IMG/VR virus record: IMGVR_UViG_3300025141_000020
Span: 1 to 64,000 of that record
DNA length: 64,000 bases
Strand: one strand, 5' to 3'
Shown: positions 12,068 through 63,107 of the stretch, piece after piece
Numbering within the stretch: position 1 is the first letter of the stretch
How the letters are laid out: each line of letters begins with the position of its first letter
The notes under the pieces: generated by a model
What the model was told of the DNA's origin: nothing
What the model saw: the letters and a program-made list of their open reading frames with translations, nothing else
The model's database searches: none
Position numbers and translations under genes: made by a program

Positions 12068-12967
12068 CTACATACAACTAAAATACCTCTCTCCCCTATC
12101 ACAAAGAATAGTAACCGCATTATTTTTATTGTTATCTCTTAGCCATTGAAATGCTGCGAATATATTAGCTGCAGCACTTATACCTACAAACAACCCGTAT
12201 TTTTTTGCTAAGTGTCTTGCACATTTTTTTGCACATGCTGTAGACACTGTTCTAACCTCATCTACCTTATCTAGGTCCACGAGGAATTTACTACCGTCTC
12301 CTATCCCTTGGATACCGTGAAGTCCTGGTTCACCACCACTCATAACAGCACTCTCTGTTGGCTCTATTGCTACTGTCTTTATGGTAGGCCACATTTCTTT
12401 TAAAAACTTATCGGTACCCATAAGGGTACCACCAGTTCCTGTTCCAGCCACAAAGACGTCTGGTGTACACTCTCTTATTTCATTAGCATCTTTAAATTGG
12501 TTGTATATTTCTGGACCTGTGCCCATATAATGTGCTTCTATATTTAACGGGTTGTGGAATTGGTTGCAATTAAACCAACCATTTTTATTACATATGTCAT
12601 CTCTTAAAGCTATTGCTCCATCAAAGTCTCCTTCTTCAACCTCAATTAATTCTGCACCATAAAACCTAAACATATTTTTCCTTTCTTCAGACATATTAGA
12701 TGGCATGATAATAACCATTTTATAACCTCTTTCCGCGGCTAACATTGCAAATGAGATACCACTATTACCTGATGTCGCTTCACATAGGGTATCACCTCGT
12801 TCTATTAGTTTTAATTTCTCTGCATTATTAATAATAAAGCTTGCCATTCTATCTTTAACAGAACCACTAGGATTCATAAATTCAGATTTGCCCCAAACGG
12901 TAAAATCCCCAATGGTAATGGGGATTAACGGGGTGTTACCCACATAATCAGATAGTCTTTGTTTCAT
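12068..12967 (-). CDS. cysK: Cysteine synthase (O-acetylserine sulfhydrylase, PLP-dependent; auxiliary metabolic gene)
   Basis: GNTPL, NPSGSVKDR (PLP lysine), EATSGNSG, GTGTGGT, HGIQGIG, DRGERY. Confidence 0.92.
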   Translation of the reverse strand: MKQRLSDYVGNTPLIPITIGDFTVWGKSEFMNPSGSVKDRMASFIINNAEKLKLIERGDTLCEATSGNSGISFAMLAAERGYKMVIIMPSNMSEERKNMFRFYGAELIEVEEGDFDGAIALRDDICNKNGWFNCNQFHNPLNIEAHYMGTGPEIYNQFKDANEIRECTPDVFVAGTGTGGTLMGTDKFLKEMWPTIKTVAIEPTESAVMSGGEPGLHGIQGIGDGSKFLVDLDKVDEVRTVSTACAKKCARHLAKKYGLFVGISAAANIFAAFQWLRDNNKNNAVTILCDRGERYFSCM

Positions 12968-15941: not shown

Positions 15942-16190
15942 ATGGCTTGTACTAATTGTAAAAAGAACGCTAAGACTAAAACAGATAACTTAAAAGTTGG
16001 CGCTGAGTCTATTTTAAATTCATTGGATTCCTCGTTGGAAGAACAGAAACTTAAATTAGCTGAAAAATTGTTAGATGGTTCAACTAGTGTATTAAATAAT
16101 CTGGAGAAGGTTGCTGTAACTATTTTTGGGTGGATTCCTTTAGCCGTTGGTTATTATTATATAATTAAATTTATTATTTCTTTATTTTAA
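15942..16190 (+). CDS. Small CxxC protein with a C-terminal TM helix
   Basis: MACTNCKK...VAVTIFGWIPLAVGYYYIIKFIISLF; TATTTATG at 15919. Confidence 0.7.
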   Translation: MACTNCKKNAKTKTDNLKVGAESILNSLDSSLEEQKLKLAEKLLDGSTSVLNNLEKVAVTIFGWIPLAVGYYYIIKFIISLF

Positions 16191-17199
16191 AGTTTTCTCC
16201 TTCTGACAAACTTTCTAACATTCTTATTTCGTCACCATGTAACTCTTTAGGCATTATAATTTGGGGTTTAATCACCAGGTTGCCCGATTTTCCGTTTGGG
16301 GTTTTCATTCCTTTTCCGTTCACACTAAAATTTCTAGTTATATCGGATAGAGGTGGTACAGTTATTTTTATAGCTCTTTCAAAATGAGGTATTTCTATAG
16401 TCCCTCCAAGAATCATATCCATAATCGGTGTTTGTGGTTCATAAATTAAATCACTAGCTAATAATTTAAAGTGTGGGTGTCTATTTATAACGACCTCTAT
16501 TAGGAGGTCACCAGGATGTCCTTGGTAAATCTCGTCTCCACCACCTTTATAAATAAAAGTTTGTCCTGTTGATAGGTTGGATGGGATTGTAAAGTCTACT
16601 ACCCTATCTTGAGTTATACCTCCCTTTCCTTTACAGTTAGTACAAGGTTTAATAACAATTTTACCTCTCCCTGCACAACTATTACACTGGTGTCTTTGTA
16701 CTTGTCTAAAGAAAGCGTTTCCAGCAACCTTTTCTATATGTCCTGTCCCGTTACACGTACTACAATTAACACTTTCACCACCCGCTCCTACACAAGCAGC
16801 ACAGTTAACGTTTTTTCTATATTTTAACTTTTTTGAATGACTAAAGTACATATCTTCTAAGTCTACTCTTAGTGGTATATTTAAATTTCTACCTTTATTA
16901 ACCCTTTGTTGTCGTTTGCCTCTACCAAAAAATTGACCAAAAAGGTCTTCCATTTCTGGACCACCTCTGTGGTGACTTCTGTGGTGACCACCAAATGGGT
17001 TTTGTTCACCCATGTCATATCTTTGTTTTTTTTCTGGGTTACTTAAGGTATCGTAAGCTTCACTTACTTCTTTAAAAACCGTTTCATTACCGCCTTTATC
17101 TGGGTGATGTTGTTTAGAAAGCTTACGAAAAGCCTTTTTTATGTCATCTTGTGATGAATCTCTATTTATATTTAGAGTTTTATAGTAATCTTTAATCAT
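16174..17199 (-). CDS. dnaJ: DnaJ (Hsp40) chaperone
   Basis: J-domain HPD, four CxxCxGxG zinc repeats, C-terminal GDL motif. Confidence 0.95.
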   Translation of the reverse strand: MIKDYYKTLNINRDSSQDDIKKAFRKLSKQHHPDKGGNETVFKEVSEAYDTLSNPEKKQRYDMGEQNPFGGHHRSHHRGGPEMEDLFGQFFGRGKRQQRVNKGRNLNIPLRVDLEDMYFSHSKKLKYRKNVNCAACVGAGGESVNCSTCNGTGHIEKVAGNAFFRQVQRHQCNSCAGRGKIVIKPCTNCKGKGGITQDRVVDFTIPSNLSTGQTFIYKGGGDEIYQGHPGDLLIEVVINRHPHFKLLASDLIYEPQTPIMDMILGGTIEIPHFERAIKITVPPLSDITRNFSVNGKGMKTPNGKSGNLVIKPQIIMPKELHGDEIRMLESLSEGENFKIKK

Positions 17200-22304: not shown

Positions 22305-23243
22305 CTATGTTCTCCATTTTCTATTTCCACAGCATTCGCTTGCGGCAACAGCAATATTTCCTCCTCCTTTGATGCCGAGCTTTTTTGCGTCTGCATCAGA
22401 TATTTCAAGGTTTTTATGGTACTCCACCGCTTCACCATCAGGGAAAACAAGTACTCCTCCACCCTCATCATAATATGGTCCTGCCGAGTTACCTTGGTCG
22501 GAGATACAAATTACTAACCCTCCTTTTTCCCAGTCGTAAGGAATCCACTTCATACAACCATCCTTAAACCAATCTGGTTTCTTTGTTCCTGGATTATCTT
22601 CAATCCTCATACAATCTACAAACATTTGCCATCTATTAACATCACCTAGTCCGATAACATATTTAAGACAAGCTTTAATCCTATCACAATCATTTCCGGA
22701 TTCTGCTGGAATGTCTATATCGATAAACCAATCGTCACCATCTATCTCTATACTATCTCCACCATCATCAGTCCCTTGTTGTTGTTTACAATTACATTCT
22801 CTCTGACATAAAATATACGCTGCTGAATCTTTAGGGCTTGCGCTACCGTAACAATACCCACAAAGTGAATTAAGGGTATTCCATCCAACTTTTCCGTCTA
22901 CACTTAACTGTCCAGCATCTCTTTGGAATTCTTCTACTGCTTTCTTTGTTTCTTTTTCAAATTTACCGTCACAATTAGTCCAGTTTTCTATACATCCTTC
23001 GTTTATTCCACCACCTTGTTTTGTTGGGTTATACGGTCCCATCTCCCCACATCCTTTTGCTAAAAGATGTTGTATCATTTTAACCACATCACCTCTAGAC
23101 CCTCTTTTAGCTACCTTTATCTTACACCATATATCACATGGGACATCACCTTCCCTAATTCTCCCACCACTATATTGTTCAGATATAACTTGTGAAATTA
23201 TTTCAGTTAATTGTGATTCAGTTAATTTAATTTTTTTCATCAT
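22305..23243 (-). CDS. Cys-rich peptidoglycan-binding-domain protein with a capsid-targeting-like leader
   Basis: RGSRGDVVKMIQHLL...DGKFEKETKKAVEEFQ...LSVDGKVGWNTL (PG_binding_1); leader MKKIKLTESQLTEIISQVISEQ. Confidence 0.75.
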   Translation of the reverse strand: MMKKIKLTESQLTEIISQVISEQYSGGRIREGDVPCDIWCKIKVAKRGSRGDVVKMIQHLLAKGCGEMGPYNPTKQGGGINEGCIENWTNCDGKFEKETKKAVEEFQRDAGQLSVDGKVGWNTLNSLCGYCYGSASPKDSAAYILCQRECNCKQQQGTDDGGDSIEIDGDDWFIDIDIPAESGNDCDRIKACLKYVIGLGDVNRWQMFVDCMRIEDNPGTKKPDWFKDGCMKWIPYDWEKGGLVICISDQGNSAGPYYDEGGGVLVFPDGEAVEYHKNLEISDADAKKLGIKGGGNIAVAASECCGNRKWRT

Positions 23244-26964: not shown

Positions 26965-27309
26965 TTAGATACAGTATTTTTTAATAATTTCTATAGCTTC
27001 ATCATTACCATTAAAAGCTACACCAGCACTGAAATATTCTACATCACCGTTAGACGACTCTAATATCATAACTGGTGTAAATTTTATCTTACCTGGGTTT
27101 TCTTCGTCTGCATCACGAAAGTCCCATCTGTTTTGGATATTTTCTTTTATTTCCTTCCCTTCTAGTCCTCTAGCACCATCTCGTGGTGTTATACATCTAA
27201 TTGTATGTGGTATACTTAAATCATTAAGTCTTTTTTTCAAATCAATACAATCAGTGCATTCATTTTCGGTAAATAGTGATAGTTTATACTTACTAGTATC
27301 TAATTTCAT
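26965..27309 (-). CDS. Glutaredoxin/thioredoxin-fold protein
   Basis: LFTENECTDCIDLKKRL (CxxC) and cis-Pro motif FTPVMIL. Confidence 0.7.
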   Translation of the reverse strand: MKLDTSKYKLSLFTENECTDCIDLKKRLNDLSIPHTIRCITPRDGARGLEGKEIKENIQNRWDFRDADEENPGKIKFTPVMILESSNGDVEYFSAGVAFNGNDEAIEIIKKYCI

Positions 27310-30255: not shown

Positions 30256-30591
30256 TTATACTATCCCTGGACCTGTGTCATCATTTTTAGGTGGTTTATT
30301 TTCCTCAAACCACTCTACAACAGCGTTAATAGCCCAAACAGAACCACTAGCTAACATACCATCAAAAAATATATTGCTATATGGTATTGTTACCATACTA
30401 ATAGTTGGTGAGTAAAATGCTATAGAGAAAAAGAATCCGACCCATGTTGAGGTACACATCATACACTCTAATAGGTCACCTAGGAACGTTGACTGGTTCG
30501 TTATCCATTGTCTTGTTTTATCGAATATGCTTCCAAATACTAGTATTTGTGACATTCCGTAAGCTGCTAAAATCCATATAAGTATTTCCAT
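30256..30591 (-). CDS. DUF1360-like CxxC membrane protein
   Basis: IFDKTRQWI...LLECMMCTSTWVGF with flanking TM helices. Confidence 0.7.
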   Translation of the reverse strand: MEILIWILAAYGMSQILVFGSIFDKTRQWITNQSTFLGDLLECMMCTSTWVGFFFSIAFYSPTISMVTIPYSNIFFDGMLASGSVWAINAVVEWFEENKPPKNDDTGPGIV

Positions 30592-35127: not shown

Positions 35128-35137
35128 AAGACAAATA

Positions 35138-36325: not shown

Positions 36326-36326
36326 T

Positions 36327-39451: not shown

Positions 39452-39452
39452 T

Positions 39453-41849: not shown

Positions 41850-41886
41850 ATTTTTTTCTTTATTTATAAATACATTTTATATCACT

Positions 41887-45300: not shown

Positions 45301-45308
45301 TTTCTATA

Positions 45309-49472: not shown

Positions 49473-49476
49473 ATAA

Positions 49477-52400: not shown

Positions 52401-53241
52401 CTAGTTGTCTTTCACTTTCATCACCATTAGGCTTTAAGTAAAATTTTGTGGTGGTGGATGTCACTGCTGTACCAAAAGGGTCTCCCTCTACTATTATTTC
52501 TATAAAAGATGACCCTATAGTTTGTGCTATAAAGTCAACAACTTTATATTCTTGAGTACCGACATTATTATTAAAAGTTAAAACATAATCTTTATACTCA
52601 TTTGTTATATTTCTTAATTTAGATACCTTACCTTCAGCGATTTTAGTTATTGTATTTGCTGTATTACCTAGATTTTCTAAATTTAATATAACTTCTTCTG
52701 GTGACAAATGTCCGTCTAATAGATTTCCATTTGTTGTAAATTCTATATTAAATGGGTTGGATATGTAATTAACATCACACTTAAAGGTTGTTCTATTTGT
52801 TGTGATGTTATAACTTATATTATACGCTGTAGTATATCCGGTTGTTTCATAGATATCGGTACCATCAAAATATAATGCTGCGGGAAATGTGTTGATGATG
52901 TTATCTACAGCAACATTTAACCTTTTCTTTAGGGAGCCATATAAAACAAAACTACTTAAATCACTAGTGTCGTTATTTATAAAAACCTCTAAATTATTGC
53001 TAGCTGTAGTTCTTGCTATCTCTAGATTAGCTATGCCTAGTGTTGATAATGTTATTGGGTTGGAGAAACTATTTATTTCGTACCCTACTGGCACTGGATT
53101 ACTTATATCTTGCGCAAAAGAGAATGTGCTATTGGTCATTTGTGATGACCCGTCAGTTATTTGGTTTCCGACTAAATTATCACTAAATGTTTCACTGCCG
53201 TTTGGTGGTGCTGGAGGGTATCGGAATCTATTACTTGCCAT
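49477..53241 (-). CDS. Baseplate wedge-like structural protein
   Basis: LYRRILLN..YLFKSKGTRKAIEFLL resembles the P2 gpI-type KGT motif; 1254 aa. Confidence 0.6.
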   Translation of the reverse strand: MASNRFRYPPAPPNGSETFSDNLVGNQITDGSSQMTNSTFSFAQDISNPVPVGYEINSFSNPITLSTLGIANLEIARTTASNNLEVFINNDTSDLSSFVLYGSLKKRLNVAVDNIINTFPAALYFDGTDIYETTGYTTAYNISYNITTNRTTFKCDVNYISNPFNIEFTTNGNLLDGHLSPEEVILNLENLGNTANTITKIAEGKVSKLRNITNEYKDYVLTFNNNVGTQEYKVVDFIAQTIGSSFIEIIVEGDPFGTAVTSTTTKFYLKPNGDESERQLGSLKGVEAFLMTRNVIPIYTAKFKIVKETSEGVKFYDYINKTWPLGDDVNLDVVSSAYIDYLKGLADIGDELDNIKTNLVSRFLTSPTLKEFDTPDQKVEKTLQIYGRSFDDIKTFVDGIAYMTNVTYDGKNNIPNGLIKNFARTLGWSTPSTLDKVGFLDSVLGVSKPTYSGSSVGMTPAELDIELYRRILLNTGYLFKSKGTRKAIEFLLTLVGAPEALIEFNEYVVLADTKINMNTPLSFVWDDNSLNAMTTGGTYHYEQAQNKFTRSWSTLSGGTYTSSTINYSVPLSQWYYETGATSHNFQRSDYPIDNEGFPVRPRVTNNYFFQRGAGWFQRTEEHKSDIIVNRDKSILTGCTPTIVNKFENFTWGGFWTGGEYSNRIKAPYLDRFRRFPHMYFGFGLTRMIDDKKSWNRKEPQLETRDWVYDTRASYYQTQDERLVLNVKNVDISLNIGQALVYDVYRQSVEYGCFFSANTNSMTGGTLYSTFQTSIDDTGKWFGANYSQTVVGQTDDGTPYTGSKFRSGGAGSHDGGFASNKNFRRSKGALLRFEVCVNDTSPQTIIGFSPGTLTTNDISTPPNVTHFVESIFFTGRNIKVYSDANNSGSATEQGTNVLGSNVWTSGVDKFFKGEIRLKEGGGAIYTLYADGSPHVMSTFETYGNVLEDVKVFVSEDDSGGASGQFLILNYIYVFDETIAGLSIDTRNMNFKRFLNNFWKVLIDVRDRMTINDGKTGGYPVLQQIYLQYLQEVCANNNQYTYTKMLSYVRELGTYWLKLVEEMVPATTLWTSGEKVENSAFHRDKFVYRCFNPSGNTMPIIPQILITGPALSGYTSYPQARMASTPMMMSLPAPPTSGSLYFNNIISGGTYNPISSYANQYNINNQNRASGSELVREVTNRLANRYHSNKDKYLSQSIFTKQGATDNILNIDGLKCFGANTQAWIENYNIAPTNIVGNNTNQGAQSYNIKSSSFNY

Positions 53242-53251
53242 AATTCCGAAT

Positions 53252-54172
53252 TTAAACTTTTATATTACTAAAAATCTTACCGAAATCTATATTATTACCT
53301 CTATTTTGCCTAACCTCATATAATTGGTCGTTATATTGGTCTCTAACCTCATATAAGTCGTATTGAGCGTAGATGTTGTTGTTACCAGATAAATCATATA
53401 AAGTGTAAATACCGTCATCGATAGATTTAGTTTGATTACCGTAAGCTGCTATTGCTAATGTTTCAAAGTCGTGGTCTACCATTTCAATATCTAACACCAA
53501 TGGATTAAAAAATGTATTAGTTATTATAACCTTTTGACCTGGTTGTCCAATAAATGGTATAGCGTTTGGATTATTAGAAGGTGCACTAGTTGGTGTTAGT
53601 GTACAAAAAATTAAATTAGTTTGTTTATTAGTATAAACATATCTTGGTGATATTTGATTTGGATTAGATAGGTTTGCTGTTACTGGTTCACAAAAAAAGT
53701 TAGACGTTACTACTCTGAAAAAATTATGTATTTTTTCGTTATTTAGTTGTAGGTATTCTATTCTATATCCAACTAGTCCGTGTGGTTGAAATCTACTTCT
53801 AAATTCTGTTGGTATGTTATTTAAGTCGAATACTAACCCTTTAACGTTTGGTAGTGATGATAGTATCCCACAATCAATAATTTCTGTTCTGATTTCTGCA
53901 GGTCTTATGTAGACAGTGTATATTCCTTTATTTGCAAAAATATTGGATGGGAGACTTAGGTTATATAATCCACCTAACACCTCTATTCCAGCAGATGCTG
54001 GACCCCCAGTGCCCCCTGCATGGTAATATGGGGTAAGTACCGAATTTGCTTGTAATTTAAATAGTGTAGTTGTACTGGTAGCGTCTCTATTAGGTGCTGC
54101 GTGTACAATCACTTCCATATCATCTGGAAGTACATCAGCTGGTCTCTTTATTCCGTATGCTCCTAATGCCAT
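53252..54172 (-). CDS. Putative structural protein (306 aa)
   Basis: Position in the late operon; no recognised domain. Confidence 0.6.
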   Translation of the reverse strand: MALGAYGIKRPADVLPDDMEVIVHAAPNRDATSTTTLFKLQANSVLTPYYHAGGTGGPASAGIEVLGGLYNLSLPSNIFANKGIYTVYIRPAEIRTEIIDCGILSSLPNVKGLVFDLNNIPTEFRSRFQPHGLVGYRIEYLQLNNEKIHNFFRVVTSNFFCEPVTANLSNPNQISPRYVYTNKQTNLIFCTLTPTSAPSNNPNAIPFIGQPGQKVIITNTFFNPLVLDIEMVDHDFETLAIAAYGNQTKSIDDGIYTLYDLSGNNNIYAQYDLYEVRDQYNDQLYEVRQNRGNNIDFGKIFSNIKV

Positions 54173-54175
54173 ATA

Positions 54176-54397
54176 TTAAGGTTGTTTGTCAATTTTATAA
54201 AATCCTCTACCGTGTAATGCTAATTCACCTAGATTCGGTACTTGTCCTAGTCTTTGTGGTCTCTCAAAAACACTAATTCTGCCTCTTTCTATGAATATAT
54301 TCGACCTAACTTCTGGTCTCTCACATACATTCATTAATACCTCTTCTTTTGTTAAGGGTATTATACATCCGGTTACATCAACTTTTTGTAAAGGCAT
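54176..54397 (-). CDS. Small late protein (73 aa)
   Basis: PLTKEEVLMNV.ERPEVRSNIFIERG; own TATTTATA at 54408-54415. Confidence 0.7.
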   Translation of the reverse strand: MPLQKVDVTGCIIPLTKEEVLMNVCERPEVRSNIFIERGRISVFERPQRLGQVPNLGELALHGRGFYKIDKQP

Positions 54398-54455
54398 CGT
54401 TTTTTATTATAAATATCTGTGTACTCATTTATTTGTTTCATTAGGCACATAATTT

Positions 54456-57400
54456 CTATAGTAGTGTTAACGGAGTACCACAACTTTCACAACCCTCTTT
54501 AACACCACATGTAACCCATTGTCCTGTATGGTTATGAAATTGTACGGTTATAGTTCCTAATGTTCCTCCTGCTGCAGTAGTGTCATGTAGAACATTACCA
54601 TAACCATCATTTGCCCAACTAACGTGACCAGGAATAGGACTTCCATTTGGGTAAACCGCTGTAGTTGTAGCCTCCCAAAAACAATCTCCTAGAACACCAT
54701 TTTGAAATGGGTCTGGGTTACCTCCTGGGCCTCCAGCTACACAACATACACAACAGTCACCTGATAAAGTACCTGAGCCGTAATTGTAGAATCCACTTAA
54801 ACCTGGGTATGTAAAACATTCGTTTTCTTGGAAAGCATACTGTATGGTTGGGAAACTCCATTGGCTACCTCCTAAATATGAATGGGTAAGTGGTTGTCCT
54901 GGTGCTAGTAAACCTGCTGACATTAAATCTGGTTCACAGCATCCACAAATTGTGTGTTCACAACAGTTTTGGGTACAACCAGTATAATCACTTATTGGCC
55001 ATGCATCGTCCCACACATTAGATGGACCTCCAGTTGTTCCTGTCCCAGGAAGTATCCAACAATCACATGTTATGGGTCCTGTTGTACAATGACAAGGTCG
55101 AGCTCCACCCCATACCTCAGGACAACAACCTTGAGCACCTCTTGGAGATAATGTTGGGTCCCATATTTGACATGCAGGTCCTAAATTTGGTAATGGGCTC
55201 GGATTAAGGTATAAACCTGAATCGTTATATTTAGTAGCTGTCCCCAAAGGAAGTGTTGCTGCACAAGCAGCCCCGGTAATACTATCGGCATTACACTGAT
55301 TCACACAAGCATTAAAATTAGTGGGACTTACCCATTCACAAGCCAGATTCCTCATAATGGATTGTATTTCTACGAAATCTGTACATGTTGATACGTCGGT
55401 ATTGTATTCGGTCATCAATCCAGCAATAGTATCTCCCCAAGATGGGTACATAGCGAAGCCTAATCCCCAAGTCGTATGACAATGGTATGTACCCCCGTTT
55501 GGGTTTGGTGGATAGCCACTAGATGAGCTTGGTGGTGCGTTAGAATATGTGCTATAAAACAGATGGTCAGAAGAACACATGCCTCCGGTTCCCACTCCTG
55601 TTGGTGGTGGAATCGGGCAAGGAACAGTTTGTCCTGGTGACGATATTCCTACTGTATTGGTGTAAACACTTTGTATTGCAGGCTGGAAAGGTGGGGCAAC
55701 GTTAATATGCCAGTTGATGTAATCCGTGGGAGTACCAACAACACCACTATGGTTAGTATTACTACATTTTGATTGAGCCCACCAATATGGACTACTATTA
55801 CATAAGTAAGACTTACATAAGGCGTCACAGTCTACTTGATTCACAAAAACATCTGGGTCACTATAACTATACATCGCTTGAACACACCCACCAATATTTC
55901 CATCAATACATTTCCACGTTAGTGTTGGTGTACCTCCTGTACCACATGTAAAACATTTCTCATCAAGTCCAGTGGAATTAAGAAAGTGTTCAGTGTCACA
56001 TGGCACCCACCATGGCTTACCGGCACCTTGACCCTGCCAAGTTGTTACGTTAGGGCTAGGTCCCATTGTATAGAGATTTAACCCGTCTGCACTATTACCA
56101 GATAACCAATTACACCAATGTTCTGATGGTGAGTATTGGTCTGGTAACATATTTGCTAAATGTTGTCCTGCATCCCACATCTGAGTTCTAACCCAACAAC
56201 AGCCCGGGTGGAGTGGGTCTTTTACAATTTGTCCTTCTCCCCAATAAGGTTCTGTGCTTGACCACATTTGTACTGTTGTGTGGGGTATTACATTGGTTCC
56301 GTCCCAACCGTCAAATGTGTTTGGTACTGAGTTATCATATATCCCAAGACTACCATTCGATAATACAGTTGGATTCCAATAGCCAAGTAAACCAGCCTGA
56401 TGATGGTACCATGATTTTTGTCCCACACACTGGTCACATTCTCCTGGCTCTATAGGTTCACAATTATTTGTTAATGTCATGCAACTATAGAAACTATCAT
56501 AACAATCACGAGTACAAGTTGCACACCCCCAATCTAATTCACATGGTGTTGGTGCTGATGGAGGTGTACATGGTCCAACATTTATATCTAACCATCCACT
56601 ACATTTACAAGGGTTTAATACTGAATTTGGGTTAGATACTATGTATTGGCTACCCATTGGATTTTGACATATAATACAACATGGTACTGGTGGTCCAGAA
56701 GATACAGGAGCAGAACCTATAGTTCCTAGATTAATATCTACGGGATTAACATCTGGCCCTAATACTTTTTGATGTACTATTTGCTCTGATACGAATCCTT
56801 CTGTTGTTGGATAGATTGGTACTGGGCCGTCATTACACTTGCCCATACTTACTTGTGTGTCGATTCCATTACAATTACAAGGAGCTGCTCCCTGCACTAT
56901 ATAGTAAATAATACCTGTTCCACGAACCTCTGGTAGATGTTTACAACATATTTTACAATTTCCTGAACTACTCCCACCGTCTGGGCATTCTACCATTGGT
57001 CCCGTGCCATCTAAAGACGTACAATACATTCGGCATGGTAAATTTTGGGGGTTTGGGTAGCTAAGTGTCGTACCTGCTACACAACCACCTTGGCCATCAT
57101 CTTCACAACAACAACAATCCTGTGGACAACTAATCTGACTAATTCCCGCACAAACTGAGTTACATGGTAGTCCTGTTGGGTTGAATTGCGTCGTTTGTGT
57201 ACCGTTAACACAGTTTCCAAATCCATCGTCCTCACAACAACAACATGGAGTTCCTTGGGTGGTGGGTTCACAACAGTATTTACACCATTCCTGACACTTT
57301 TCTAAACTAGAGAAAGGTGTACCACCACCATTATAACTCACTTGTGAACCAGGAGCTCCAGCGTCAGTACCCCAAACATTATCCCCATAAGATGCATTAG

Positions 57401-60400
57401 CTGTTATTTCAGTGTTTATATATGGGTATTCTTCTATACAATTTGTTATCTGATATGGGTATTGTGGGTTATTATCGTCACACCACCATCTTTCTTCATA
57501 CACTACAGGAGGACACTCTGGGTCACATGGAATCCACATTAAATCAGTACCGTACGCTGGTAGTCCTGAAGTATTTAAGGCGTTCATATATAGATTATAA
57601 TAATCAGAAGGTAACATTGTTGTATCATACAGTGCCCAATCCCCTGTACCTAAAACCATCACATAACAACAACCATCTTGAGTCACAACATCACCATTTA
57701 TGTATGTTCCTCCATTAGCTGTTGGTGTTGGTGTCCATGACAAAGGTGTACTATTAAAGCTGGTCAAGGTAATACTATAAGTTAGTAGAACACCAGCACT
57801 ACCCTCGTAATGGTATGTTATGGTATTATCTAAACATTTCTCACACTCACAACATCTTTGATTATTGTTTGTTGCTGCATGACAGCACGCTAAGGTGTAA
57901 CATGGTGGTAATTGTACTGGATTAGTTGGTGCGGCTGTGAACTCACATTGGCACACACCATTACATTCAAATTGACATACCAGTTGGCAGTCAGCTTGTG
58001 CAGTAGGACCTACATATGGCCCAGACATTAAGGTGTTAATTACTGGGTAAACTATACATCCCAGTATATCATCACAATAATAATCTAGGTATATTTCTAC
58101 ACAAGGCTCCTCGGTAATGATACAATCAATTAGTGTTGCATAACAATCTGCTGCCATACAGTTGCAGTTTTGATTCATAGCACAATACCAGTTTAAATAA
58201 CAAGTTCCTGGGGATGAGGTTACTGAGTCACAGTCACAACAAAATCTACAAGCTTCTTGACAAGCTCCTAGTGAAGTAAAATAAGCCATATTGTTTACAG
58301 CTCTAGTTACAGCTCCAACACCAAATAAATTTGTATCTAATAGTGTGCTAATATTACTCACACAACCACCCAAACTAGCACTGTAATCATAGTGACACCA
58401 GTACTCTGTTGGTGGTAATGAACAGTCACAAGGTGTTGTTGTTGTTGTTGCTAAGAAACAACCTAAAGCGTCCCAGAAAAAAGTACCAGCACAGTTAGAT
58501 ACATTTCCGACAAAAGTACATACAGACACACCATTAGGGTCGCAGCACCAAGTACACTCTGGTTGACAGTCCCCTAATGACGTAAAGTTTGTAGTTAGTG
58601 GGTTTTGGTACAGTGCGTCACCATCATTTACTTCTACACACCCAGTACCATCTACATTTACCACCGCATTAGGTGAACAATCAGAACTATCGTCACAATA
58701 CCATTGTGGCGGTAATGGTCCGGGACAACAGTTTGGTAATAACGCATTTACTGGATTTATACCCATACATTCATTGTAGGAATTGTATGCGTAAACATTT
58801 GGTGGACAATCCGTTGGGATTGGACCAGATGCTAGAATTAATTCTTGTTGGTAAGTTGCACACATTGGTATGCAAGGATTTGTTCCTGGTATACAAAAAC
58901 ATTGTGCGTCACACTCATCACCACTACCATTATCACAAGTTGAGTTATTATAACAATTAAAAATATGTCCTGTTCCCATAGTAGTGTCACACGCACTTGG
59001 TACACATCCGTCTGGTGAACATTCCCAACTTGGTGTATAGGCCGGGTCACAAACATCACATGGGTCATAAGTTGCTGCTTGCCATATAAATGGTACTGGT
59101 GGGTCTCCTGGCGTTAGATTACAACTTACCCAACAGTTTGGTACTGAACCAGCTGGTGGGTCTCCTGGTGTAAAATGATTACAATCATATGTTGTTGGGT
59201 CTCCTGGTGTAGGTGGGGTTTGTGGTAATATAATAGGGCAATCACATCTAAAACAACAAAAATCGGTATCAGTATCACCCCAATAAACAGCATCATCTTC
59301 ATCGTAAAACTGGAATAAACTATTCCAGGCTCCAGTTGAATTTACTGGTTCCGGGCCACATGCACAATCACATGTTTCATCTGTTGGGTCACAACATGTT
59401 GGAGTAGTAGCTGGTGCTACTGGTGGGCATAAAGCGTTAGTACAATCAAACATAAAACACCACGGATATGCGGGGTTAAATACATACCCAGATGATGTTG
59501 GGTCATTACATGGGGTAGTTGATATGTTGTAAGCCTGGTCGTATGAACAAGGCCAATCTAATATTGGTGATGGTGGCCCATTTGGGTACCAAATCATATT
59601 GAATCCTGATGTTAAGTCATCATCACAGTCCGCATAACAACATCCTTGATTTGCATAACAACAAGCTGAAAAAGTGTCATATCCGGTCCATAATGGGTCT
59701 GGGTCGGTAACCTGCCAATTATTTTGAGCTATAATTGTTTGACTAATCCCTTGTTTACAACCAATTAAAACCGGTGGTATAGTTGGTGTCGTTGTTGTAC
59801 CTGTTTCTGTAAAGCAGTCCCAACCAAAATCACAAATACAAGCTGCTAGACAAGATGGTTGGTCAGGATAAGATGGGATTCCGTTTAATCCTCCTGTTGG
59901 GTCTGGACCATATGTGTTAGGACTTGTAGATATTAGTGTAGGACACATGTTTGGGTAGGAACTAGTACATGGAGTCATGGCATTACAATCACATGTCCAA
60001 CATTCTATATTTACTGTACAAGCTGTAACACAGTCTGCCTCGGTTAAGTATGGACCAGTACCGGTTGGTGGTCCACCTAATGTATACCATGGTATACATG
60101 GACTCTGGTATGGTCCTGGTGTAGGTGGGTTATATACAATATATGGGTCATCACACCACCAACTACAAGGTACATCTCCAACTACATTTGACACACCAAA
60201 ATATATTAACATATTTGATTCACAGTCACTTTGTGAAGGCCACAAGGTGGCGTTTGGGTCCATTGAACCAATAACTAGTGGTCCTGGTGTCGGTATACCA
60301 CCCAAAGACTGGCATCCACTTTCACAATCCCAAGTCCAGACTGTATCAATACAACATCCTGCTATAGGGCCAATAGGTGCTAGATTAACTGGTGGTATAA

Positions 60401-63107
60401 ATGTGCTTGGTGCATTAGATAGTACACCATTATTACAATCACTTATGAGATAAGGTGGACTTAAATATAAACTATAGTTATAAGCTAAATCAGTAAATGT
60501 GTTATTTATTGCGTTAACACTAATCATTGTGTTAATATATAAGGTAGCATCATAGTCACAACCTAATGTATCACAACAAGGCACTCCCATAGCCGCTGGT
60601 GTTGTACATGAATAAGCTATTGGTTCACAATAATCACTACATAGTGGTTCTGTAGCAAAAGATAGTGGTGTAAAATAAAGAGGGTCGTCAGATAGTATTG
60701 GGTAACATCCTTGACATGTATATTGTTCTGTACATACCCATCTACTATCAAAACACGTACCATCATTTAAGTTAGTATCACAGTCACCCCAAAACATTTC
60801 TCCGGTTACAGTAATTGGATTACCAAATTGGTCAACCGTATCTAAAGTTGCTCCCGATATCATAATACAGTCCAGACTTGTAGAACTTGGTAATGGACAT
60901 GCTTGCCAGTGTGGGGATATGTCTGGTTCACCATAAGTTCCTGCATAGTTCCATTCAGAACAAGGAAAAGATGATGAAATCTGGTCAGTTAAACACACGT
61001 AACATACACCATTATAACTTACCGTATCATTCTCATTATAGCTAGCAAACGTAGAATCCCAAGGTCCCCCAAGCCATCCCCATGGATTAGAATTCATTTG
61101 CATGGCATTGAAGATACCATTTATTCCAATACAATCAACATCACAATCTCCTACTGGCCCTTCTATAGGACAAACCCAACTTACACACCCTATGTAATCC
61201 CATTGGGTTGTAAATTGCATTGTGTATCCTGTTGGTGGGTCTAATGTTCCACTAACTAGGGCTTGGTAACAATTTCCTTCTGTTCCTTCTACGAAGTCTC
61301 CAGCGTTATAAAAGTTACCCTGACTATAAAAGTTAGTTGGTCCTAGTGTAAAGTCGTTACATGGCGTATTTGTTCCTGGTGGACATGCAACACAATCTGG
61401 AGTACAAGCTTCCCATACATGTGTTTTAACACCACCGTCATTATATACCCCTTCTTCCATCATAACAGGGGCTACACCATACCATGGGTCAGATGAAGAT
61501 ATGTTTATTACAGCCATAAAACAACAACAAGAATTATATGTAACATCATAAACTATATCACCTATAGCATAGTTACCACTTGGTGACCAATCACCAATTA
61601 CAGTACCTGGACCTATTGGTATTGAAGTTCCCATAATTCCAGGTATATTACCTCTATCCACATATTCATCTTTTGTTGTACAATATTCACAATCACCTGA
61701 TGGACACGCAATGCATTCTTCTGCTCCCCACGCTAAATTATCTAAACCACAACTCGTAGCCTCAAAAATTGTTATCCCGTTAGTAAAGTCCCAGAAATTT
61801 ATTGGTGTGTCACCATCAGCCCATGTACCACTAGAGTTTGCTGCGGAAGATATGGTGTAAGCTGTAAACACGGTAGTTGCATCTGTAATCACACCATATA
61901 CACCAGTTAAAAATCCGTTAGTTATAGGGTCTAAAACATCACCACCTATAGGTACTACCACACCAACATTAAAACCTGGTGGTAGGTTAGGTGAGTTTAA
62001 GTTTGTATATGTTTGAAAATTACCCAAAATACTATCTGTTATTCCTGACACCGTAAAACATGGTTTACCAGATATAGCTCCAGGGCCAAAAGTCATACCA
62101 CTGTATTGATTTATGTGGGTTGCTGAATCCAGAGGTAAATCTGGGTAGTCATTAAAATAACCTGTAGATGAACCTTGAAAACCACTTGGGTTACCAAATA
62201 TATCATAGGTTGGTGGTCCCGTTAGGGGACTTGATTGGTCCATTTGAAATGGTGGAGTTGCTAATGGACCGGCCATAAATGGATAAGTCTCTAATGGTAG
62301 TGATAATATTTTTTCAGTACTTAGTGGTCCCCATGGTGAATCTTGTGTAATGGTCACCTTATATTTTGCTGGTGTTGTCGGATAAATCTTTATATCTTGT
62401 GTAGTTAAATTTGGAAAATACATGTGTTGCACTGATGTTCCGTCACCCCAGTCGATAGTATATGGTGACTTTTGTAATTGTTCGTAATATCCAAAATCAG
62501 TAGTATTACTTACTAACACACCATAACCACTGTTGGATACACCAGAATAAACAAAGTTAGCGAAAACTTCTTGTTGTGATATATTTCCATCCCAAACAGA
62601 ATAATGTCCAATATCATTAAAATCTTGACTTAAAAAAATTGGTACTTTACTAACATCTGGACCTAGTTGGTCTAGACATTCACAACCAAAAGTGTTTGGT
62701 GTTATGTTAATAGGGTTATTATTACTTTGGCCAACATTTATAACACTCCTTGTTTGATTAAAACTATCACTGTATGTGGTTCCTAATAAGGTAACATGTA
62801 GCCCTTTAAAAAGTATGTATAAAAAACTATCTACACTGGTACAGTGGTTAGGGCTATTATTAGGCCCTGTATTCCACAAAATAACACAAGGGTCACTTGG
62901 GGAACAATGTTTTAGTTCTTCTGGGAATGTATTAAGTATGTCTCCATTAATTGCAGACATAACATCAACTCCAGTAGTATTGTACATAGTAATGCCAGAA
63001 CAATTTGTACTAGTGTTTATAGGCCAAAAATTTGTACCACCACTACAAGGTATTTCCCAATATATATCTGGGTTTATTCTCTTTATTCTAAATTTTTGTA
63101 CTTCCAT
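54456..63107 (-). CDS. Giant Cys/Pro-rich virion protein with PKD-like and CBM5/12-like modules
   Basis: 2883 aa, about 230 Cys (manual count), few K/R; YTIDWGDG PKD-like motif; W-x4-6-Y-x2-GD-x-V repeats; WxC...C...F/Y.S/T..xCxxxC repeats. Confidence 0.8.
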   Translation of the reverse strand: MEVQKFRIKRINPDIYWEIPCSGGTNFWPINTSTNCSGITMYNTTGVDVMSAINGDILNTFPEELKHCSPSDPCVILWNTGPNNSPNHCTSVDSFLYILFKGLHVTLLGTTYSDSFNQTRSVINVGQSNNNPINITPNTFGCECLDQLGPDVSKVPIFLSQDFNDIGHYSVWDGNISQQEVFANFVYSGVSNSGYGVLVSNTTDFGYYEQLQKSPYTIDWGDGTSVQHMYFPNLTTQDIKIYPTTPAKYKVTITQDSPWGPLSTEKILSLPLETYPFMAGPLATPPFQMDQSSPLTGPPTYDIFGNPSGFQGSSTGYFNDYPDLPLDSATHINQYSGMTFGPGAISGKPCFTVSGITDSILGNFQTYTNLNSPNLPPGFNVGVVVPIGGDVLDPITNGFLTGVYGVITDATTVFTAYTISSAANSSGTWADGDTPINFWDFTNGITIFEATSCGLDNLAWGAEECIACPSGDCEYCTTKDEYVDRGNIPGIMGTSIPIGPGTVIGDWSPSGNYAIGDIVYDVTYNSCCCFMAVINISSSDPWYGVAPVMMEEGVYNDGGVKTHVWEACTPDCVACPPGTNTPCNDFTLGPTNFYSQGNFYNAGDFVEGTEGNCYQALVSGTLDPPTGYTMQFTTQWDYIGCVSWVCPIEGPVGDCDVDCIGINGIFNAMQMNSNPWGWLGGPWDSTFASYNENDTVSYNGVCYVCLTDQISSSFPCSEWNYAGTYGEPDISPHWQACPLPSSTSLDCIMISGATLDTVDQFGNPITVTGEMFWGDCDTNLNDGTCFDSRWVCTEQYTCQGCYPILSDDPLYFTPLSFATEPLCSDYCEPIAYSCTTPAAMGVPCCDTLGCDYDATLYINTMISVNAINNTFTDLAYNYSLYLSPPYLISDCNNGVLSNAPSTFIPPVNLAPIGPIAGCCIDTVWTWDCESGCQSLGGIPTPGPLVIGSMDPNATLWPSQSDCESNMLIYFGVSNVVGDVPCSWWCDDPYIVYNPPTPGPYQSPCIPWYTLGGPPTGTGPYLTEADCVTACTVNIECWTCDCNAMTPCTSSYPNMCPTLISTSPNTYGPDPTGGLNGIPSYPDQPSCLAACICDFGWDCFTETGTTTTPTIPPVLIGCKQGISQTIIAQNNWQVTDPDPLWTGYDTFSACCYANQGCCYADCDDDLTSGFNMIWYPNGPPSPILDWPCSYDQAYNISTTPCNDPTSSGYVFNPAYPWCFMFDCTNALCPPVAPATTPTCCDPTDETCDCACGPEPVNSTGAWNSLFQFYDEDDAVYWGDTDTDFCCFRCDCPIILPQTPPTPGDPTTYDCNHFTPGDPPAGSVPNCWVSCNLTPGDPPVPFIWQAATYDPCDVCDPAYTPSWECSPDGCVPSACDTTMGTGHIFNCYNNSTCDNGSGDECDAQCFCIPGTNPCIPMCATYQQELILASGPIPTDCPPNVYAYNSYNECMGINPVNALLPNCCPGPLPPQWYCDDSSDCSPNAVVNVDGTGCVEVNDGDALYQNPLTTNFTSLGDCQPECTWCCDPNGVSVCTFVGNVSNCAGTFFWDALGCFLATTTTTPCDCSLPPTEYWCHYDYSASLGGCVSNISTLLDTNLFGVGAVTRAVNNMAYFTSLGACQEACRFCCDCDSVTSSPGTCYLNWYCAMNQNCNCMAADCYATLIDCIITEEPCVEIYLDYYCDDILGCIVYPVINTLMSGPYVGPTAQADCQLVCQFECNGVCQCEFTAAPTNPVQLPPCYTLACCHAATNNNQRCCECEKCLDNTITYHYEGSAGVLLTYSITLTSFNSTPLSWTPTPTANGGTYINGDVVTQDGCCYVMVLGTGDWALYDTTMLPSDYYNLYMNALNTSGLPAYGTDLMWIPCDPECPPVVYEERWWCDDNNPQYPYQITNCIEEYPYINTEITANASYGDNVWGTDAGAPGSQVSYNGGGTPFSSLEKCQEWCKYCCEPTTQGTPCCCCEDDGFGNCVNGTQTTQFNPTGLPCNSVCAGISQISCPQDCCCCEDDGQGGCVAGTTLSYPNPQNLPCRMYCTSLDGTGPMVECPDGGSSSGNCKICCKHLPEVRGTGIIYYIVQGAAPCNCNGIDTQVSMGKCNDGPVPIYPTTEGFVSEQIVHQKVLGPDVNPVDINLGTIGSAPVSSGPPVPCCIICQNPMGSQYIVSNPNSVLNPCKCSGWLDINVGPCTPPSAPTPCELDWGCATCTRDCYDSFYSCMTLTNNCEPIEPGECDQCVGQKSWYHHQAGLLGYWNPTVLSNGSLGIYDNSVPNTFDGWDGTNVIPHTTVQMWSSTEPYWGEGQIVKDPLHPGCCWVRTQMWDAGQHLANMLPDQYSPSEHWCNWLSGNSADGLNLYTMGPSPNVTTWQGQGAGKPWWVPCDTEHFLNSTGLDEKCFTCGTGGTPTLTWKCIDGNIGGCVQAMYSYSDPDVFVNQVDCDALCKSYLCNSSPYWWAQSKCSNTNHSGVVGTPTDYINWHINVAPPFQPAIQSVYTNTVGISSPGQTVPCPIPPPTGVGTGGMCSSDHLFYSTYSNAPPSSSSGYPPNPNGGTYHCHTTWGLGFAMYPSWGDTIAGLMTEYNTDVSTCTDFVEIQSIMRNLACEWVSPTNFNACVNQCNADSITGAACAATLPLGTATKYNDSGLYLNPSPLPNLGPACQIWDPTLSPRGAQGCCPEVWGGARPCHCTTGPITCDCWILPGTGTTGGPSNVWDDAWPISDYTGCTQNCCEHTICGCCEPDLMSAGLLAPGQPLTHSYLGGSQWSFPTIQYAFQENECFTYPGLSGFYNYGSGTLSGDCCVCCVAGGPGGNPDPFQNGVLGDCFWEATTTAVYPNGSPIPGHVSWANDGYGNVLHDTTAAGGTLGTITVQFHNHTGQWVTCGVKEGCESCGTPLTLL
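56985..57246 (-). repeat. Internal tandem duplication encoding CCCCEDDGxGxCVxGT...NP..LPC...C (2 copies)
   Basis: Seen in both protein and DNA (acaacaacaaca tracts at about 57105 and 57234). Confidence 0.8.

What the first reader, a model, noticed from the sequence alone, without database searches (positions are those of the whole stretch)
12068..63107. Possible supply-and-folding pathway for Cys/Pro-rich virion proteins
Seen: exceptional Cys content in late proteins (54456, C-terminus of 45309, 38672, 39453, 22305), together with cysteine synthase translationally coupled to cyclophilin (TAATG overlap at 12967), DnaJ, a CxxC glutaredoxin-like protein and three CxxC membrane proteins (15942, 30256, 31800). 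The large Cys-rich proteins show no signal peptide, so they would fold in the reducing cytoplasm. Established: poxviruses encode a cytoplasmic disulfide pathway; I know no equivalent for tailed phages. Inference: the phage supplies Cys, isomerises prolines and controls thiol redox or metal loading for a disulfide- or Zn-stapled tail apparatus.
Basis: inference. Interest (0 to 1): 0.7.

Follow-up and report, generated by a model that had tools for sequence, protein, structure and literature searches.

The report
Cysteine-rich phage tail giants, unlinked helpers
An uncultured marine jumbo phage carries giant tail-region proteins with hundreds of conserved cysteines, and it also carries cysteine synthase, cyclophilin and DnaJ genes, but comparison with 22 related contigs shows the helper genes come and go independently of the cysteine load, so a dedicated supply-and-folding pathway is not supported.

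Summary
The window is the first 64 kb of a 210.6-kb IMG/VR myovirus contig that is about 66% complete. A 2,883-aa protein has 228 Cys and 271 Pro. Among 11 homologues, Cys is the most conserved residue (95% mean identity). CysK, cyclophilin (1-nt TAATG overlap), type-I DnaJ and a Grx-like protein are all present.

The proposed pathway is mostly not supported. CysK behaves as a mobile cassette found in four genomic contexts. Sister phages with the same structural Cys load differ in having it: G052 has it and G058 does not, and G022 has thyX where G025 has cysK. Cyclophilin, DnaJ, DnaK and Grx also occur in relatives whose proteins hold only 1.06-1.24% Cys. I found no Erv1/ALR, DsbA, DsbB or VKOR oxidase. 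CxxC spacing in the giant protein is at chance level, while CC and CxxxC are enriched.

Four giant proteins share a small module ([FY]x[ST]xxxCxxxC). Its only PDB look-alikes are Kunitz domains, which points to disulfides rather than zinc. One association remains: all five informative contigs of the highest-Cys clade carry the cyclophilin-cysK pair. That is a single clade and is not statistically significant.

My reading is hypervariable disulfide-type tail or adhesin proteins plus general auxiliary and chaperone genes.

The parts
54456..63107 (-). Giant Cys/Pro-rich protein: 2,883 aa, 228 Cys, 271 Pro, only 48 Lys+Arg. The N-terminal ~450 aa are Cys-poor and include an FN3/PKD sandwich at about residues 175-275. 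The rest is Cys-rich and holds 8 copies of the [FYW]x[ST]xxxCxxxC module.
   Evidence: Full-length homologues at 40-79% identity, with Cys 95% conserved and 77% invariant. FN3/PKD matches. No Pfam, PHROG or PDB sequence match.
45309..49472 (-). 1,387-aa protein of the tail block. Its C-terminal ~390 residues hold 32 of its 46 Cys and 3 copies of the same Cys module.
38672..39451 (-). 259-aa protein with 13 Cys, a dockerin/EF-hand-like Ca-binding repeat and three CxxC motifs conserved in clade A homologues.
39453..41849 (-). 798-aa protein of the tail block with 1.9% Cys, which is not exceptional.
34531..64000 (-). One-strand gene block that runs on to the gp6-like baseplate wedge gene at 69340-71181, outside the window. 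Inferred to encode baseplate-periphery or tail-fibre proteins. It totals about 11,500 aa in every relative, but its Cys content ranges from 1.9 to 3.3%.
12068..12967 (-). CysK/CysM-family PLP enzyme (O-acetylserine sulfhydrylase type), 299 aa, with the PLP lysine (SVKDR), TSGNSG and GTGGT motifs.
   Evidence: Pfam PALP 220 bits. NCBIfam cysKM 296 bits, below the 344 cut-off. Motifs. Found in 4 different genomic contexts among relatives.
12967..13395 (-). Cyclophilin-type peptidyl-prolyl isomerase, 142 aa. Its TAA stop overlaps the cysK ATG.
   Evidence: Present at 57-86% identity in all large relatives. Followed by cysK in clade A and by a Grx-like gene in other clades.
16174..17199 (-). Type-I DnaJ with J domain (HPD), four CxxCxGxG zinc-finger motifs and a C-terminal domain.
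   Evidence: Conserved at 31-55% identity in all relatives that cover the region. The phage DnaK lies at 162878-164749, outside the window.
26965..27309 (-). Glutaredoxin-like CxxC protein (CTDC plus a TPV cis-Pro motif), 114 aa.
   Evidence: Pfam Glutaredoxin 13 bits, below the cut-off. The family profile hits solved glutaredoxins at E 2.6e-5.
30256..30591 (-). DUF1360 membrane protein with a conserved CMMC at the start of a hydrophobic segment, lying between the SbcC and SbcD genes.
15942..16190 (+). 82-aa protein with a C-terminal hydrophobic segment and an N-terminal CxxC that is conserved in clade A only.
31800..32816 (-). 338-aa protein with three C-terminal hydrophobic segments. Its CxxC is not conserved in homologues, so it is not part of any thiol system.
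22305..23243 (-). 312-aa protein with 17 Cys and a PG_binding_1 domain, near an amidase gene. No full-length homologue was found in five relatives.

Best explanation
The window joins two features of an uncultured marine jumbo myovirus (about 300 kb when complete) that are not functionally tied together in any demonstrable way.

(1) A baseplate-periphery or tail-fibre gene block. Its largest product, and three other giant proteins in the genome, are built partly from a shared small module: a beta-hairpin followed by a helix that carries C-x3-C. This resembles the C-terminal half of a Kunitz domain in motif only. The cysteines are almost invariant while the rest of the sequence drifts, histidine is rare and poorly conserved, and basic residues are nearly absent. 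The most likely reading is surface-exposed, disulfide-stapled fibre or adhesin domains that sit in hypervariable slots. Inference: with no phage oxidase present, the disulfides form late in infection or after lysis in oxic seawater.

(2) A region of host-derived helper genes. The cyclophilin, DnaJ, DnaK, Grx and Trx genes are core or common to the whole phage group and act as general proteostasis and redox helpers. CysK is a mobile auxiliary metabolic cassette of a known kind. It may give a quantitative cysteine-supply benefit in the clade with the heaviest demand, but it is neither required for Cys-rich virion proteins nor specific to them.
For: Shown:
- Cys enrichment and Cys conservation.
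- The module occurs 21 times in only 4 proteins, against 0.7 expected.
- The module profile hits only Kunitz-type chains in the PDB (15 of 15, E 0.01-2.5). The fold search's top hits, all insignificant, are also Kunitz.
- CC and CxxxC spacings are enriched, while CxxC is at chance.
- The block lies next to a gp6-like wedge gene, and the genome has a tail sheath gene.
- The giant protein has an FN3/PKD domain.
- Cys-rich cargo is hypervariable at syntenic slots.
- CysK occurs in four contexts, with presence/absence differences between sister contigs and thyX in the same slot in G022.
- Cyclophilin, DnaJ, DnaK and Grx are present in low-Cys relatives.
- No Erv1/ALR, DsbA, DsbB or VKOR was found.
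- CysK is a documented viral auxiliary gene, present in phage P087 whose morphogenesis proteins hold 1.0% Cys.
- Disulfide-linked tail fibres exist in phage Pam3.
- DnaK and DnaJ have been described in aquatic jumbo phages with predicted Bacteroidota hosts.
Against: - Every informative clade A contig (5 of 5) keeps cyclophilin-cysK with the same 1-nt overlap. The two large contigs richest in Cys (G000, G038) both carry cysK, and the two that lack it (G056, G058) are Cys-poor.
- Cyclophilin is twice found next to a thiol or sulfur gene (cysK, or a Grx-like gene), and the Grx-like gene lies next to DnaK in clade A. This hints at a functional theme linking folding and thiols.
- Virion location, disulfide state and expression timing are all untested.
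- The contigs are 15-93% complete, so some absences could be due to incompleteness.
- The structure models have low confidence (pLDDT 58-60), and the Pfam Kunitz model finds nothing in the genome.
Confidence: 0.55

Rival explanations
1. The phage makes cysteine (CysK), isomerises prolines (cyclophilin), chaperones (DnaJ/DnaK) and controls thiol redox (Grx-like and CxxC membrane proteins), all specifically to build Cys/Pro-rich tail proteins.
For: - All parts are present.
- The cyclophilin-cysK overlap is conserved in clade A.
- Six giant proteins hold 610 of 1,223 Cys codons.
- Cys-rich proteins are also the Pro-rich ones in every relative.
- Foldase genes pair with thiol genes in two arrangements.
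Against: - The helpers are equally present in low-Cys relatives.
- CysK presence differs between sister phages with the same structural Cys load.
- In G038 and G052 cysK and cyclophilin lie 32-67 kb apart.
- No oxidase was found.
- Grx and Trx proteins are normally reductants, for example for the phage's own ribonucleotide reductase.
- The large genes downstream of cyclophilin-Grx are Cys-poor.
- One of the three CxxC membrane proteins loses its CxxC in homologues.
Confidence: 0.12
2. The cysteines of the giant proteins bind metal (Zn or Fe in Cys4 sites, or metallothionein-like clusters) rather than forming disulfides. This would fit folding in a reducing cytoplasm.
For: - No signal peptide and no oxidase were found.
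- Cys conservation fits either reading.
- CC and CxC runs also occur in metallothioneins (established knowledge).
Against: - CxxC knuckle spacing is not enriched.
- His is rare and the least conserved residue.
- The only sequence and fold look-alikes are disulfide-bonded Kunitz domains.
- The composition (acidic; rich in Pro, Gly, Thr, Trp and Tyr; almost no Lys or Arg) looks like extracellular disulfide-rich proteins (inference).
Confidence: 0.15
3. The phage CysK does not supply cysteine. It degrades cysteine to sulfide, or acts through another CysK activity, as proposed for other viral cysK genes.
For: The preprint 10.1101/2021.01.05.425418 treats cysK as a sulfide-producing auxiliary gene and reports that added sulfide raised P087 yield. 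The enzyme scores below the NCBIfam cysK and cysM cut-offs. No cysE or PAPS reductase partner is present.
Against: The catalytic motifs of O-acetylserine sulfhydrylases are intact. The phage's coding demand for Cys is unusually high, at 1.8% of residues.
Confidence: 0.2
4. The Cys-rich giants are not virion parts. They are released or injected cargo, such as polymorphic-toxin-like or surface-modifying proteins.
For: - One of them (188867-194089) has a Pretoxin-HINT domain.
- They sit in hypervariable slots.
- No PHROG structural family matches them.
Against: - The 54456 gene is embedded in a one-strand block that runs into the baseplate wedge gene.
- It has an FN3/PKD domain, and its viral fold matches are mostly fibre or tail proteins.
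- The block keeps about the same total length in all relatives.
Confidence: 0.1

Closest known systems
Viral auxiliary metabolic cysK (Kieft et al., bioRxiv 10.1101/2021.01.05.425418; e.g. Lactococcus phage P087)
   Same: A CysK-family enzyme encoded by a phage among phage genes, with intact catalytic motifs. It is patchily distributed and mobile among related phages.
   Different: - Only about 40% identical to the P087-type genes. The best phage-collection hit is 59.5%, in an uncultured 635-kb phage.
- Forms its own abundant marine viral lineage at 72-89% identity.
- In one clade it is fused by a 1-nt overlap to a cyclophilin gene.
- The carrier phage has an unusually high Cys demand.
Disulfide-linked baseplate and tail fibres of cyanophage Pam3 (PMC9942802)
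   Same: A myovirus whose tail periphery relies on cysteines. The virion is assembled in the cytoplasm with no known phage oxidase. Reductant sensitivity is the predicted test.
   Different: Pam3 uses a handful of cysteines in small wedge and fibre proteins, and its disulfides are experimentally shown. Here, hundreds of cysteines sit in 1,000-4,500-aa proteins, arranged in repeated modules, and nothing is shown experimentally.
Poxvirus cytoplasmic disulfide pathway (E10R Erv1-family oxidase, A2.5L, G4L thioredoxin-like; own knowledge, Senkevich et al. 2002)
   Same: Virion proteins with structural cysteines are made in a reducing cytoplasm, and the virus encodes thioredoxin-fold CxxC proteins.
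   Different: No Erv1/ALR oxidase is present in this contig or in a 93%-complete relative. No evidence exists for a thiol relay.
Kunitz/BPTI domains
   Same: The module ends in GC...[FY]x[ST]xxxCxxxC, like the C-terminal half of Kunitz domains. The module profile and the model retrieve only Kunitz chains, weakly.
   Different: The Pfam Kunitz_BPTI model finds nothing in the genome. The number and spacing of N-terminal cysteines differ. There is no evidence of protease inhibition.
Aquatic jumbo phages with DnaK/DnaJ ('moraphages', PMC12619734)
   Same: A jumbo genome of about 300 kb from an aquatic source that encodes DnaK and DnaJ. Its low GC content would fit the Flavobacteriia hosts predicted for that group.
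   Different: Membership was not tested phylogenetically. That paper does not mention cysteine synthase, cyclophilin or Cys-rich proteins, and its genomes are mainly from freshwater.

Membership tests
Poxvirus-type cytoplasmic disulfide-bond pathway | FAD-linked Erv1/ALR sulfhydryl oxidase encoded by the virus | tested here: not met
   PF04777 gave no match in G000, none in G038 (93% complete), and none over the cut-off in 7 other relatives.
Poxvirus-type cytoplasmic disulfide-bond pathway | Thioredoxin-fold CxxC protein that passes disulfides to virion proteins | tested here: inconclusive
   Three Trx-fold CxxC proteins exist: 26965-27309, Grx at 162367-162804 and Trx at 179431-179739. Their direction (oxidant or reductant) and their substrates cannot be read from sequence.
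CysK/CysM O-acetylserine sulfhydrylase | PLP-dependent fold with the catalytic Lys, the substrate (Asn) loop and the Gly-rich phosphate loop | tested here: met
   PALP 220 bits. SVKDR, TSGNSG and GTGGT motifs are present.
CysK/CysM O-acetylserine sulfhydrylase | Score above the curated equivalog or subfamily cut-off | tested here: not met
   cysKM 295.7 bits against a cut-off of 344; cysK 280.8 bits against 351. It is a divergent member, and its substrate is not assured.
Cyclophilin-type PPIase | Pro_isomerase domain above the gathering score | tested here: met
   142.1 bits against a cut-off of 21.7, covering residues 4-135.
Type I DnaJ (Hsp40) | J domain with HPD, four CxxCxGxG motifs and a C-terminal substrate-binding domain | tested here: met
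   Three Pfam domains match. HPD at residue 32 and four CxxCxGxG motifs. TIGR02349 scores 279.5 bits, below its 377 cut-off.
Glutaredoxin | Trx fold with an N-terminal CxxC and a cis-Pro motif, matched by a family model | tested here: inconclusive
   Pfam 13.2 bits against a cut-off of 22.9. The family profile hits solved glutaredoxins at E 2.6e-5 over the first ~40 residues. CxxC and TPV are invariant.
Kunitz/BPTI domain | Match to the family model with six-Cys topology | tested here: not met
   PF00014 gave no match at E <= 10 in six frames. Only the C-terminal motif resembles the family.
Disulfide-stapled phage tail apparatus (Pam3-like) | Cysteines oxidised in the virion; fibres or baseplate lost on reduction | not testable with these tools
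   Only indirect evidence is available: Cys conservation, spacing and Kunitz-like look-alikes.
Viral auxiliary metabolic gene | Host-type metabolic gene flanked by phage genes, patchy among related phages | tested here: met
   CysK is flanked by lysozyme, cyclophilin and DUF3310 genes in a myovirus contig. Its presence is patchy and its position varies among relatives.

The most novel reading that the evidence does not exclude
A lineage of abundant marine jumbo phages builds its host-contact apparatus from giant proteins, each with 50-250 invariant cysteines arranged in Kunitz-like mini-domains. It relies on a phage-encoded proteostasis set that is repeatedly wired to thiol genes (cyclophilin next to cysK or a Grx-like gene, and the Grx-like gene next to DnaK). 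This set would supply cysteine and manage oxidative folding in the bacterial cytoplasm without any known sulfhydryl oxidase. That would be a new kind of virus-encoded oxidative-folding system in tailed phages.
Probability: 0.12. Interest if true: 0.75.

Novelty: new variant of a known kind. Interest (0 to 1): 0.45.

Why it matters
If the giant proteins really are disulfide-stapled virion parts, they would be the most cysteine-dense structural proteins I know of in a tailed phage. They would raise a clear question: how do more than 200 cysteines per chain pair correctly when the protein is made in a reducing cytoplasm with no recognisable oxidase? The group appears abundant in marine metagenomes, so its cysteine demand and its mobile cysK cassette bear on how viral auxiliary sulfur genes are interpreted. 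The comparison also gives a concrete caution. A metabolic gene and a matching demand in the same genome do not by themselves show a pathway, because here sister phages differ in cysK while keeping the same structural cysteine load.

Tried and rejected
- Megablast of 15 kb and tblastn of the giant protein against 50,697 phage records found nothing.
- Pfam and PHROGs gave no hits for the tail-block proteins.
- A profile of the giant protein found nothing in the PDB.
- ESM Atlas look-alikes gave only an unnamed viral cluster at 0.79, and nothing for the Cys-rich part.
- The two AlphaFold models had low confidence (pLDDT 58.5 and 59.7). The tool returns no coordinates, so Cys-Cys distances could not be measured.
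- The fold search of the Cys-rich model gave no significant hit (best E = 1.4).
- Kunitz membership was rejected because the Pfam model finds nothing.
- Erv1/ALR, DsbA, DsbB, VKOR, GrpE, PAPS reductase and the serine acetyltransferase N-terminal domain were searched and not found.
- A T4-type late promoter (TATAAATA) lies upstream of 39453 and 109741 and a few other genes, but the sites are too few to assign expression timing.
- Expression evidence: the one RNA run found held only short, mostly unlike pieces, so it gave no evidence.
- The 'three CxxC membrane proteins form a redox set' idea was rejected for 31800 because its CxxC is not conserved.
- The TAATG overlap was rejected as evidence of special coupling because 1-nt and 4-nt overlaps are common in this genome.
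- PHROGs scans around the second Cys-rich cluster (188-203 kb) named only an endolysin and the DNA polymerase.
- Not used: complex prediction, the search of protein representatives and the metagenome or genome contig scans. No claim here depends on them.
Full report
**What the window is.** The 64-kb window is the start of a single 210,568-bp IMG/VR virus record (linear, CheckV completeness 66%, 33.6% GC). The record is a contractile-tailed phage. A gp6-like baseplate wedge gene lies at 69340-71181 and a tail sheath gene at 96547-99942. The nearest named sheath relative is Microcystis phage Mel-JY01 at 32% identity. Related contigs reach 246-298 kb, one of them 93% complete. Close homologues come from marine metagenomes, including Tara. 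The host is unknown. A 2025 paper describes aquatic jumbo phages with DnaK and DnaJ and predicted Bacteroidota hosts (PMC12619734). This may be a related group, but I did not test that.

**Checking the observation: the Cys-rich proteins.** Cysteine enrichment is real and extreme for 54456-63107(-): 2,883 aa, 228 Cys (7.9%) and 271 Pro (9.4%), against a background of 1.08% Cys. It is also real for three others:
- the C-terminal ~390 residues of 45309-49472, which hold 32 of its 46 Cys;
- 38672-39451, with 13 Cys in 259 aa;
- 22305-23243, with 17 Cys in 312 aa.

It is not real for 39453-41849, which has 1.9% Cys (P = 0.03). The 22305 protein carries a peptidoglycan-binding domain, sits near an amidase gene, and has no full-length homologue in five relatives, so it is not part of the tail block.

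**Checking the observation: the helper genes.**
- CysK (PALP, 220 bits) and cyclophilin (142 bits) overlap as TAATG.
- DnaJ is a complete type-I protein.
- The CxxC protein at 26965-27309 is below Pfam's glutaredoxin cut-off, but a profile of seven homologues hits solved glutaredoxins at E 2.6e-5, with invariant CxxC and TPV.
- All three 'CxxC membrane proteins' have hydrophobic segments. The CxxC is conserved in 30256 (DUF1360) in four of five relatives (no homologue in the G028 fragment) and in 15942 in one clade only. It is missing from homologues of 31800.
- Outside the window there are four more Cys-rich giants of 1,002-2,948 aa with 3.4-6.0% Cys. There is also a DnaK gene with a Grx-like gene directly downstream, and a thioredoxin gene.

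**What the Cys-rich proteins are.** The giant gene is real. Full-length homologues at 40-79% identity keep the frame open.
- In an 11-sequence alignment, Cys is by far the most conserved residue: 95% mean identity and 77% of positions invariant. The next, Trp, is at 71% and 31%. His is the least conserved (38%) and rare.
- The protein has only 48 Lys+Arg. Long stretches have none, and it is rich in Pro, Gly, Thr, Asp, Trp and Tyr.
- CxxC spacing is at chance (18 observed, 16.4 expected). CC (29 against 19.8) and CxxxC (25 against 14.9) are enriched.
- A motif [FYW]x[ST]xxxCxxxC, usually preceded by a hairpin that carries further cysteines (often C…GC), occurs 21 times in just four proteins (45309, 54456, 188867, 194122), against 0.7 expected in shuffled proteomes.
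- The AlphaFold model of residues 1440-1760 has low confidence (pLDDT 59.7). It places the CxxxC on a helix that follows a beta-hairpin.
- A profile of 20 module copies retrieves only Kunitz-type chains from the PDB: 15 of 15 hits, with weak E-values of 0.01-2.5, aligned over GC…NxFxSxxxCxxxC.
- The fold search's best hits, all insignificant, are also Kunitz domains. The Pfam Kunitz model finds nothing in the genome.

So this is a resemblance in motif, not family membership. Together these features favour disulfide-bonded, extracellular-type mini-domains over zinc knuckles. That is an inference.

**Are they virion proteins?** The N-terminal part of the giant protein contains an FN3/PKD sandwich at about residues 175-275 (VIA Z about 8). 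The best viral hit is a PKD-domain phage protein at E 5e-15, and the other viral matches are mostly fibre or tail proteins. The gene sits in a one-strand block that runs from the baseplate wedge gene down to the primase gene. 'Virion' and 'tail' are therefore reasonable inferences from position and fold, and they are not shown. 'Late' is untested.

**The comparative test: data.** I fetched 22 related IMG/VR contigs whole, called ORFs with one script, and located markers by BLASTP. The block between primase and the wedge gene totals about 11,000-11,700 aa in every contig, but its Cys content falls into two classes:
- Clade A has a 2,450-2,990-aa giant with 197-255 Cys, and a block Cys content of 2.9-3.3%.
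- The other clades have 1.9-2.1% Cys in the block. Their largest protein is about 3,000 aa with 50-70 Cys, and they also carry a protein of about 900 aa with about 5% Cys.

**The comparative test: cysK.**
- All five clade A contigs that extend far enough beyond the DruA gene carry cyclophilin-cysK with the same 1-nt overlap (G000, G015, G020, G033, G055). Five more clade A contigs end within 2.8 kb of DruA and are uninformative.
- Elsewhere cysK is present in G038, G052, G025 and G028, and absent in G056 (77% complete), G058 and G022.
- It lies in four different contexts: after cyclophilin; between a 176-aa gene and DruA; directly after SbcC; and as a cysK+DUF2452 cassette on the opposite strand.
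- G052 and G058 are sisters at about 80% aa identity with identical block Cys content (1.96%). They differ by a clean insertion of cysK+DUF2452.
- G022 has thyX exactly where G025 has cysK+DUF2452, with the same Cys-rich proteins.
- Counting informative contigs gives 5 of 5 against 4 of 7. By my own arithmetic (not a tool result) one-sided Fisher p is about 0.16, and the five are a single clade.

**The comparative test: whole large contigs.**

| Contig | Overall Cys | Cys in rich large proteins | cysK |
|---|---|---|---|
| G000 | 1.81% | 675 | present |
| G038 | 1.63% | 656 | present |
| G052 | 1.24% | 98 | present |
| G058 | 1.24% | 89 | absent |
| G056 | 1.06% | 99 | absent |

 This is a trend and no more than that.

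**The comparative test: the other helpers.** Cyclophilin is present in every large contig whatever its Cys load, and DnaJ in every contig that covers its region. DnaK is present in the low-Cys G056 and the Grx-like gene in G052, G056 and G058.

**Wider context for the helper genes.** CysK is an established viral auxiliary gene with a broad distribution. In Lactococcus phage P087 it is transcribed and translated (bioRxiv 10.1101/2021.01.05.425418). In the phage collection it occurs in 77 records. P087's morphogenesis proteins hold 1.0% Cys. Cyclophilin, by contrast, is nearly absent from cultured phage records: 24 records, most of which look like host contigs. Its conservation across this group is therefore unusual in itself. 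The phage CysK keeps the catalytic motifs but scores below the NCBIfam cut-offs. No cysE-type or PAPS-reductase partner was found. One-nucleotide overlaps are frequent in this genome, so the overlap alone says little.

**Is there an oxidative pathway?** No Erv1/ALR, DsbA, DsbB or VKOR model matches the contig. No Erv1/ALR is present in the 93%-complete relative or in seven others. The Trx-fold proteins present are of the kinds that normally reduce substrates, and the phage has a ribonucleotide reductase that would need such reductants. Disulfide-linked tail fibres and wedges that are sensitive to DTT are already documented in cyanophage Pam3, which has no reported phage oxidase (PMC9942802). 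A disulfide-stapled tail therefore does not require a dedicated pathway.

**A lead that keeps the idea partly alive.** In the low-Cys clades, cyclophilin is directly followed by a Grx-like CxxC protein with a coiled-coil tail (G052, G058, G056, G051/G054). In clade A, that Grx-like gene sits directly after DnaK and cyclophilin is followed by cysK. Foldase and chaperone genes thus pair with thiol genes in at least three arrangements, which is more than I would expect by chance for about five thiol genes among about 300. I noticed this after the fact. It does not track the Cys load, and the large genes downstream of cyclophilin-Grx are Cys-poor.

**Verdict.** The best-supported reading is hypervariable, probably disulfide-stapled tail or adhesin giants, plus a general set of auxiliary and chaperone genes that includes a mobile cysK cassette. 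The integrated supply-and-folding pathway keeps a probability of about 0.12. Expression timing, virion location and thiol state remain untested. The one RNA run found gave no usable evidence.

Noticed in passing
window 14683-15858 (-): A DruA-like protein (Pfam DruA, 86 bits) is one of the most conserved genes of the whole phage group: 76-92% identity in relatives whose other genes are 30-60% identical. A Druantia defence component kept this strictly by a phage is unexplained.
   Followed up: partly
L060:5707-6102 (G025); also G020 8862-9251, G033 5081-5569, G052 133001-133399: CysK is often followed by a DUF2452 gene (74-78% identity between contigs). The two move together as a cassette. G000 itself lacks DUF2452, and G022 has thyX in the same slot.
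   Followed up: partly
G000 162367-164749 (L005:18367-20000 and beyond): A phage-encoded DnaK (867 bits) has a Grx-like CHYC protein with a coiled-coil tail directly downstream. In other clades the same Grx-like gene directly follows cyclophilin instead.
   Followed up: partly
L007:4867-10089 (G000 188867-194089): A 1,740-aa protein with 5.2% Cys contains a Pretoxin-HINT domain (77.5 bits) at residues 833-948. Next to it is a 2,948-aa protein with 5.0% Cys and eight Cys modules.
   Followed up: no
G000 106512-112810; G038 167003-203286: The slot after the DNA polymerase gene is hypervariable. It holds one 1,002-aa Cys-rich gene in G000 and 33 kb of Cys-rich genes in G038, including a 4,512-aa protein with 215 Cys. 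It is small in G052 and G058; in G056 it spans about 17.5 kb but holds little Cys-rich content.
   Followed up: partly
window 26029-26829 (-): A phage-encoded sigma-70 family factor (regions 1.2, 2 and 4) is conserved at 62-79% identity across relatives.
   Followed up: no
window 27893-31807 (-): The SbcC-like and SbcD-like (Metallophos) nuclease genes are separated by a conserved DUF1360 membrane protein with an invariant CMMC, and by a 145-aa gene.
   Followed up: no
window 56897-57124 (-) and G000 109771-109989 (-): A 76-residue stretch of the giant protein (residues 662-737; weak CBM_5_12 hit at 688-711) is 45% identical to the C-terminus of the 1,002-aa Cys-rich protein.
   Followed up: no
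window 12967-13395 (-): Cyclophilin genes are almost absent from 50,697 phage records (24 hits, mostly host-like contigs). Yet this gene is conserved at 57-86% identity across this phage group.
   Followed up: partly
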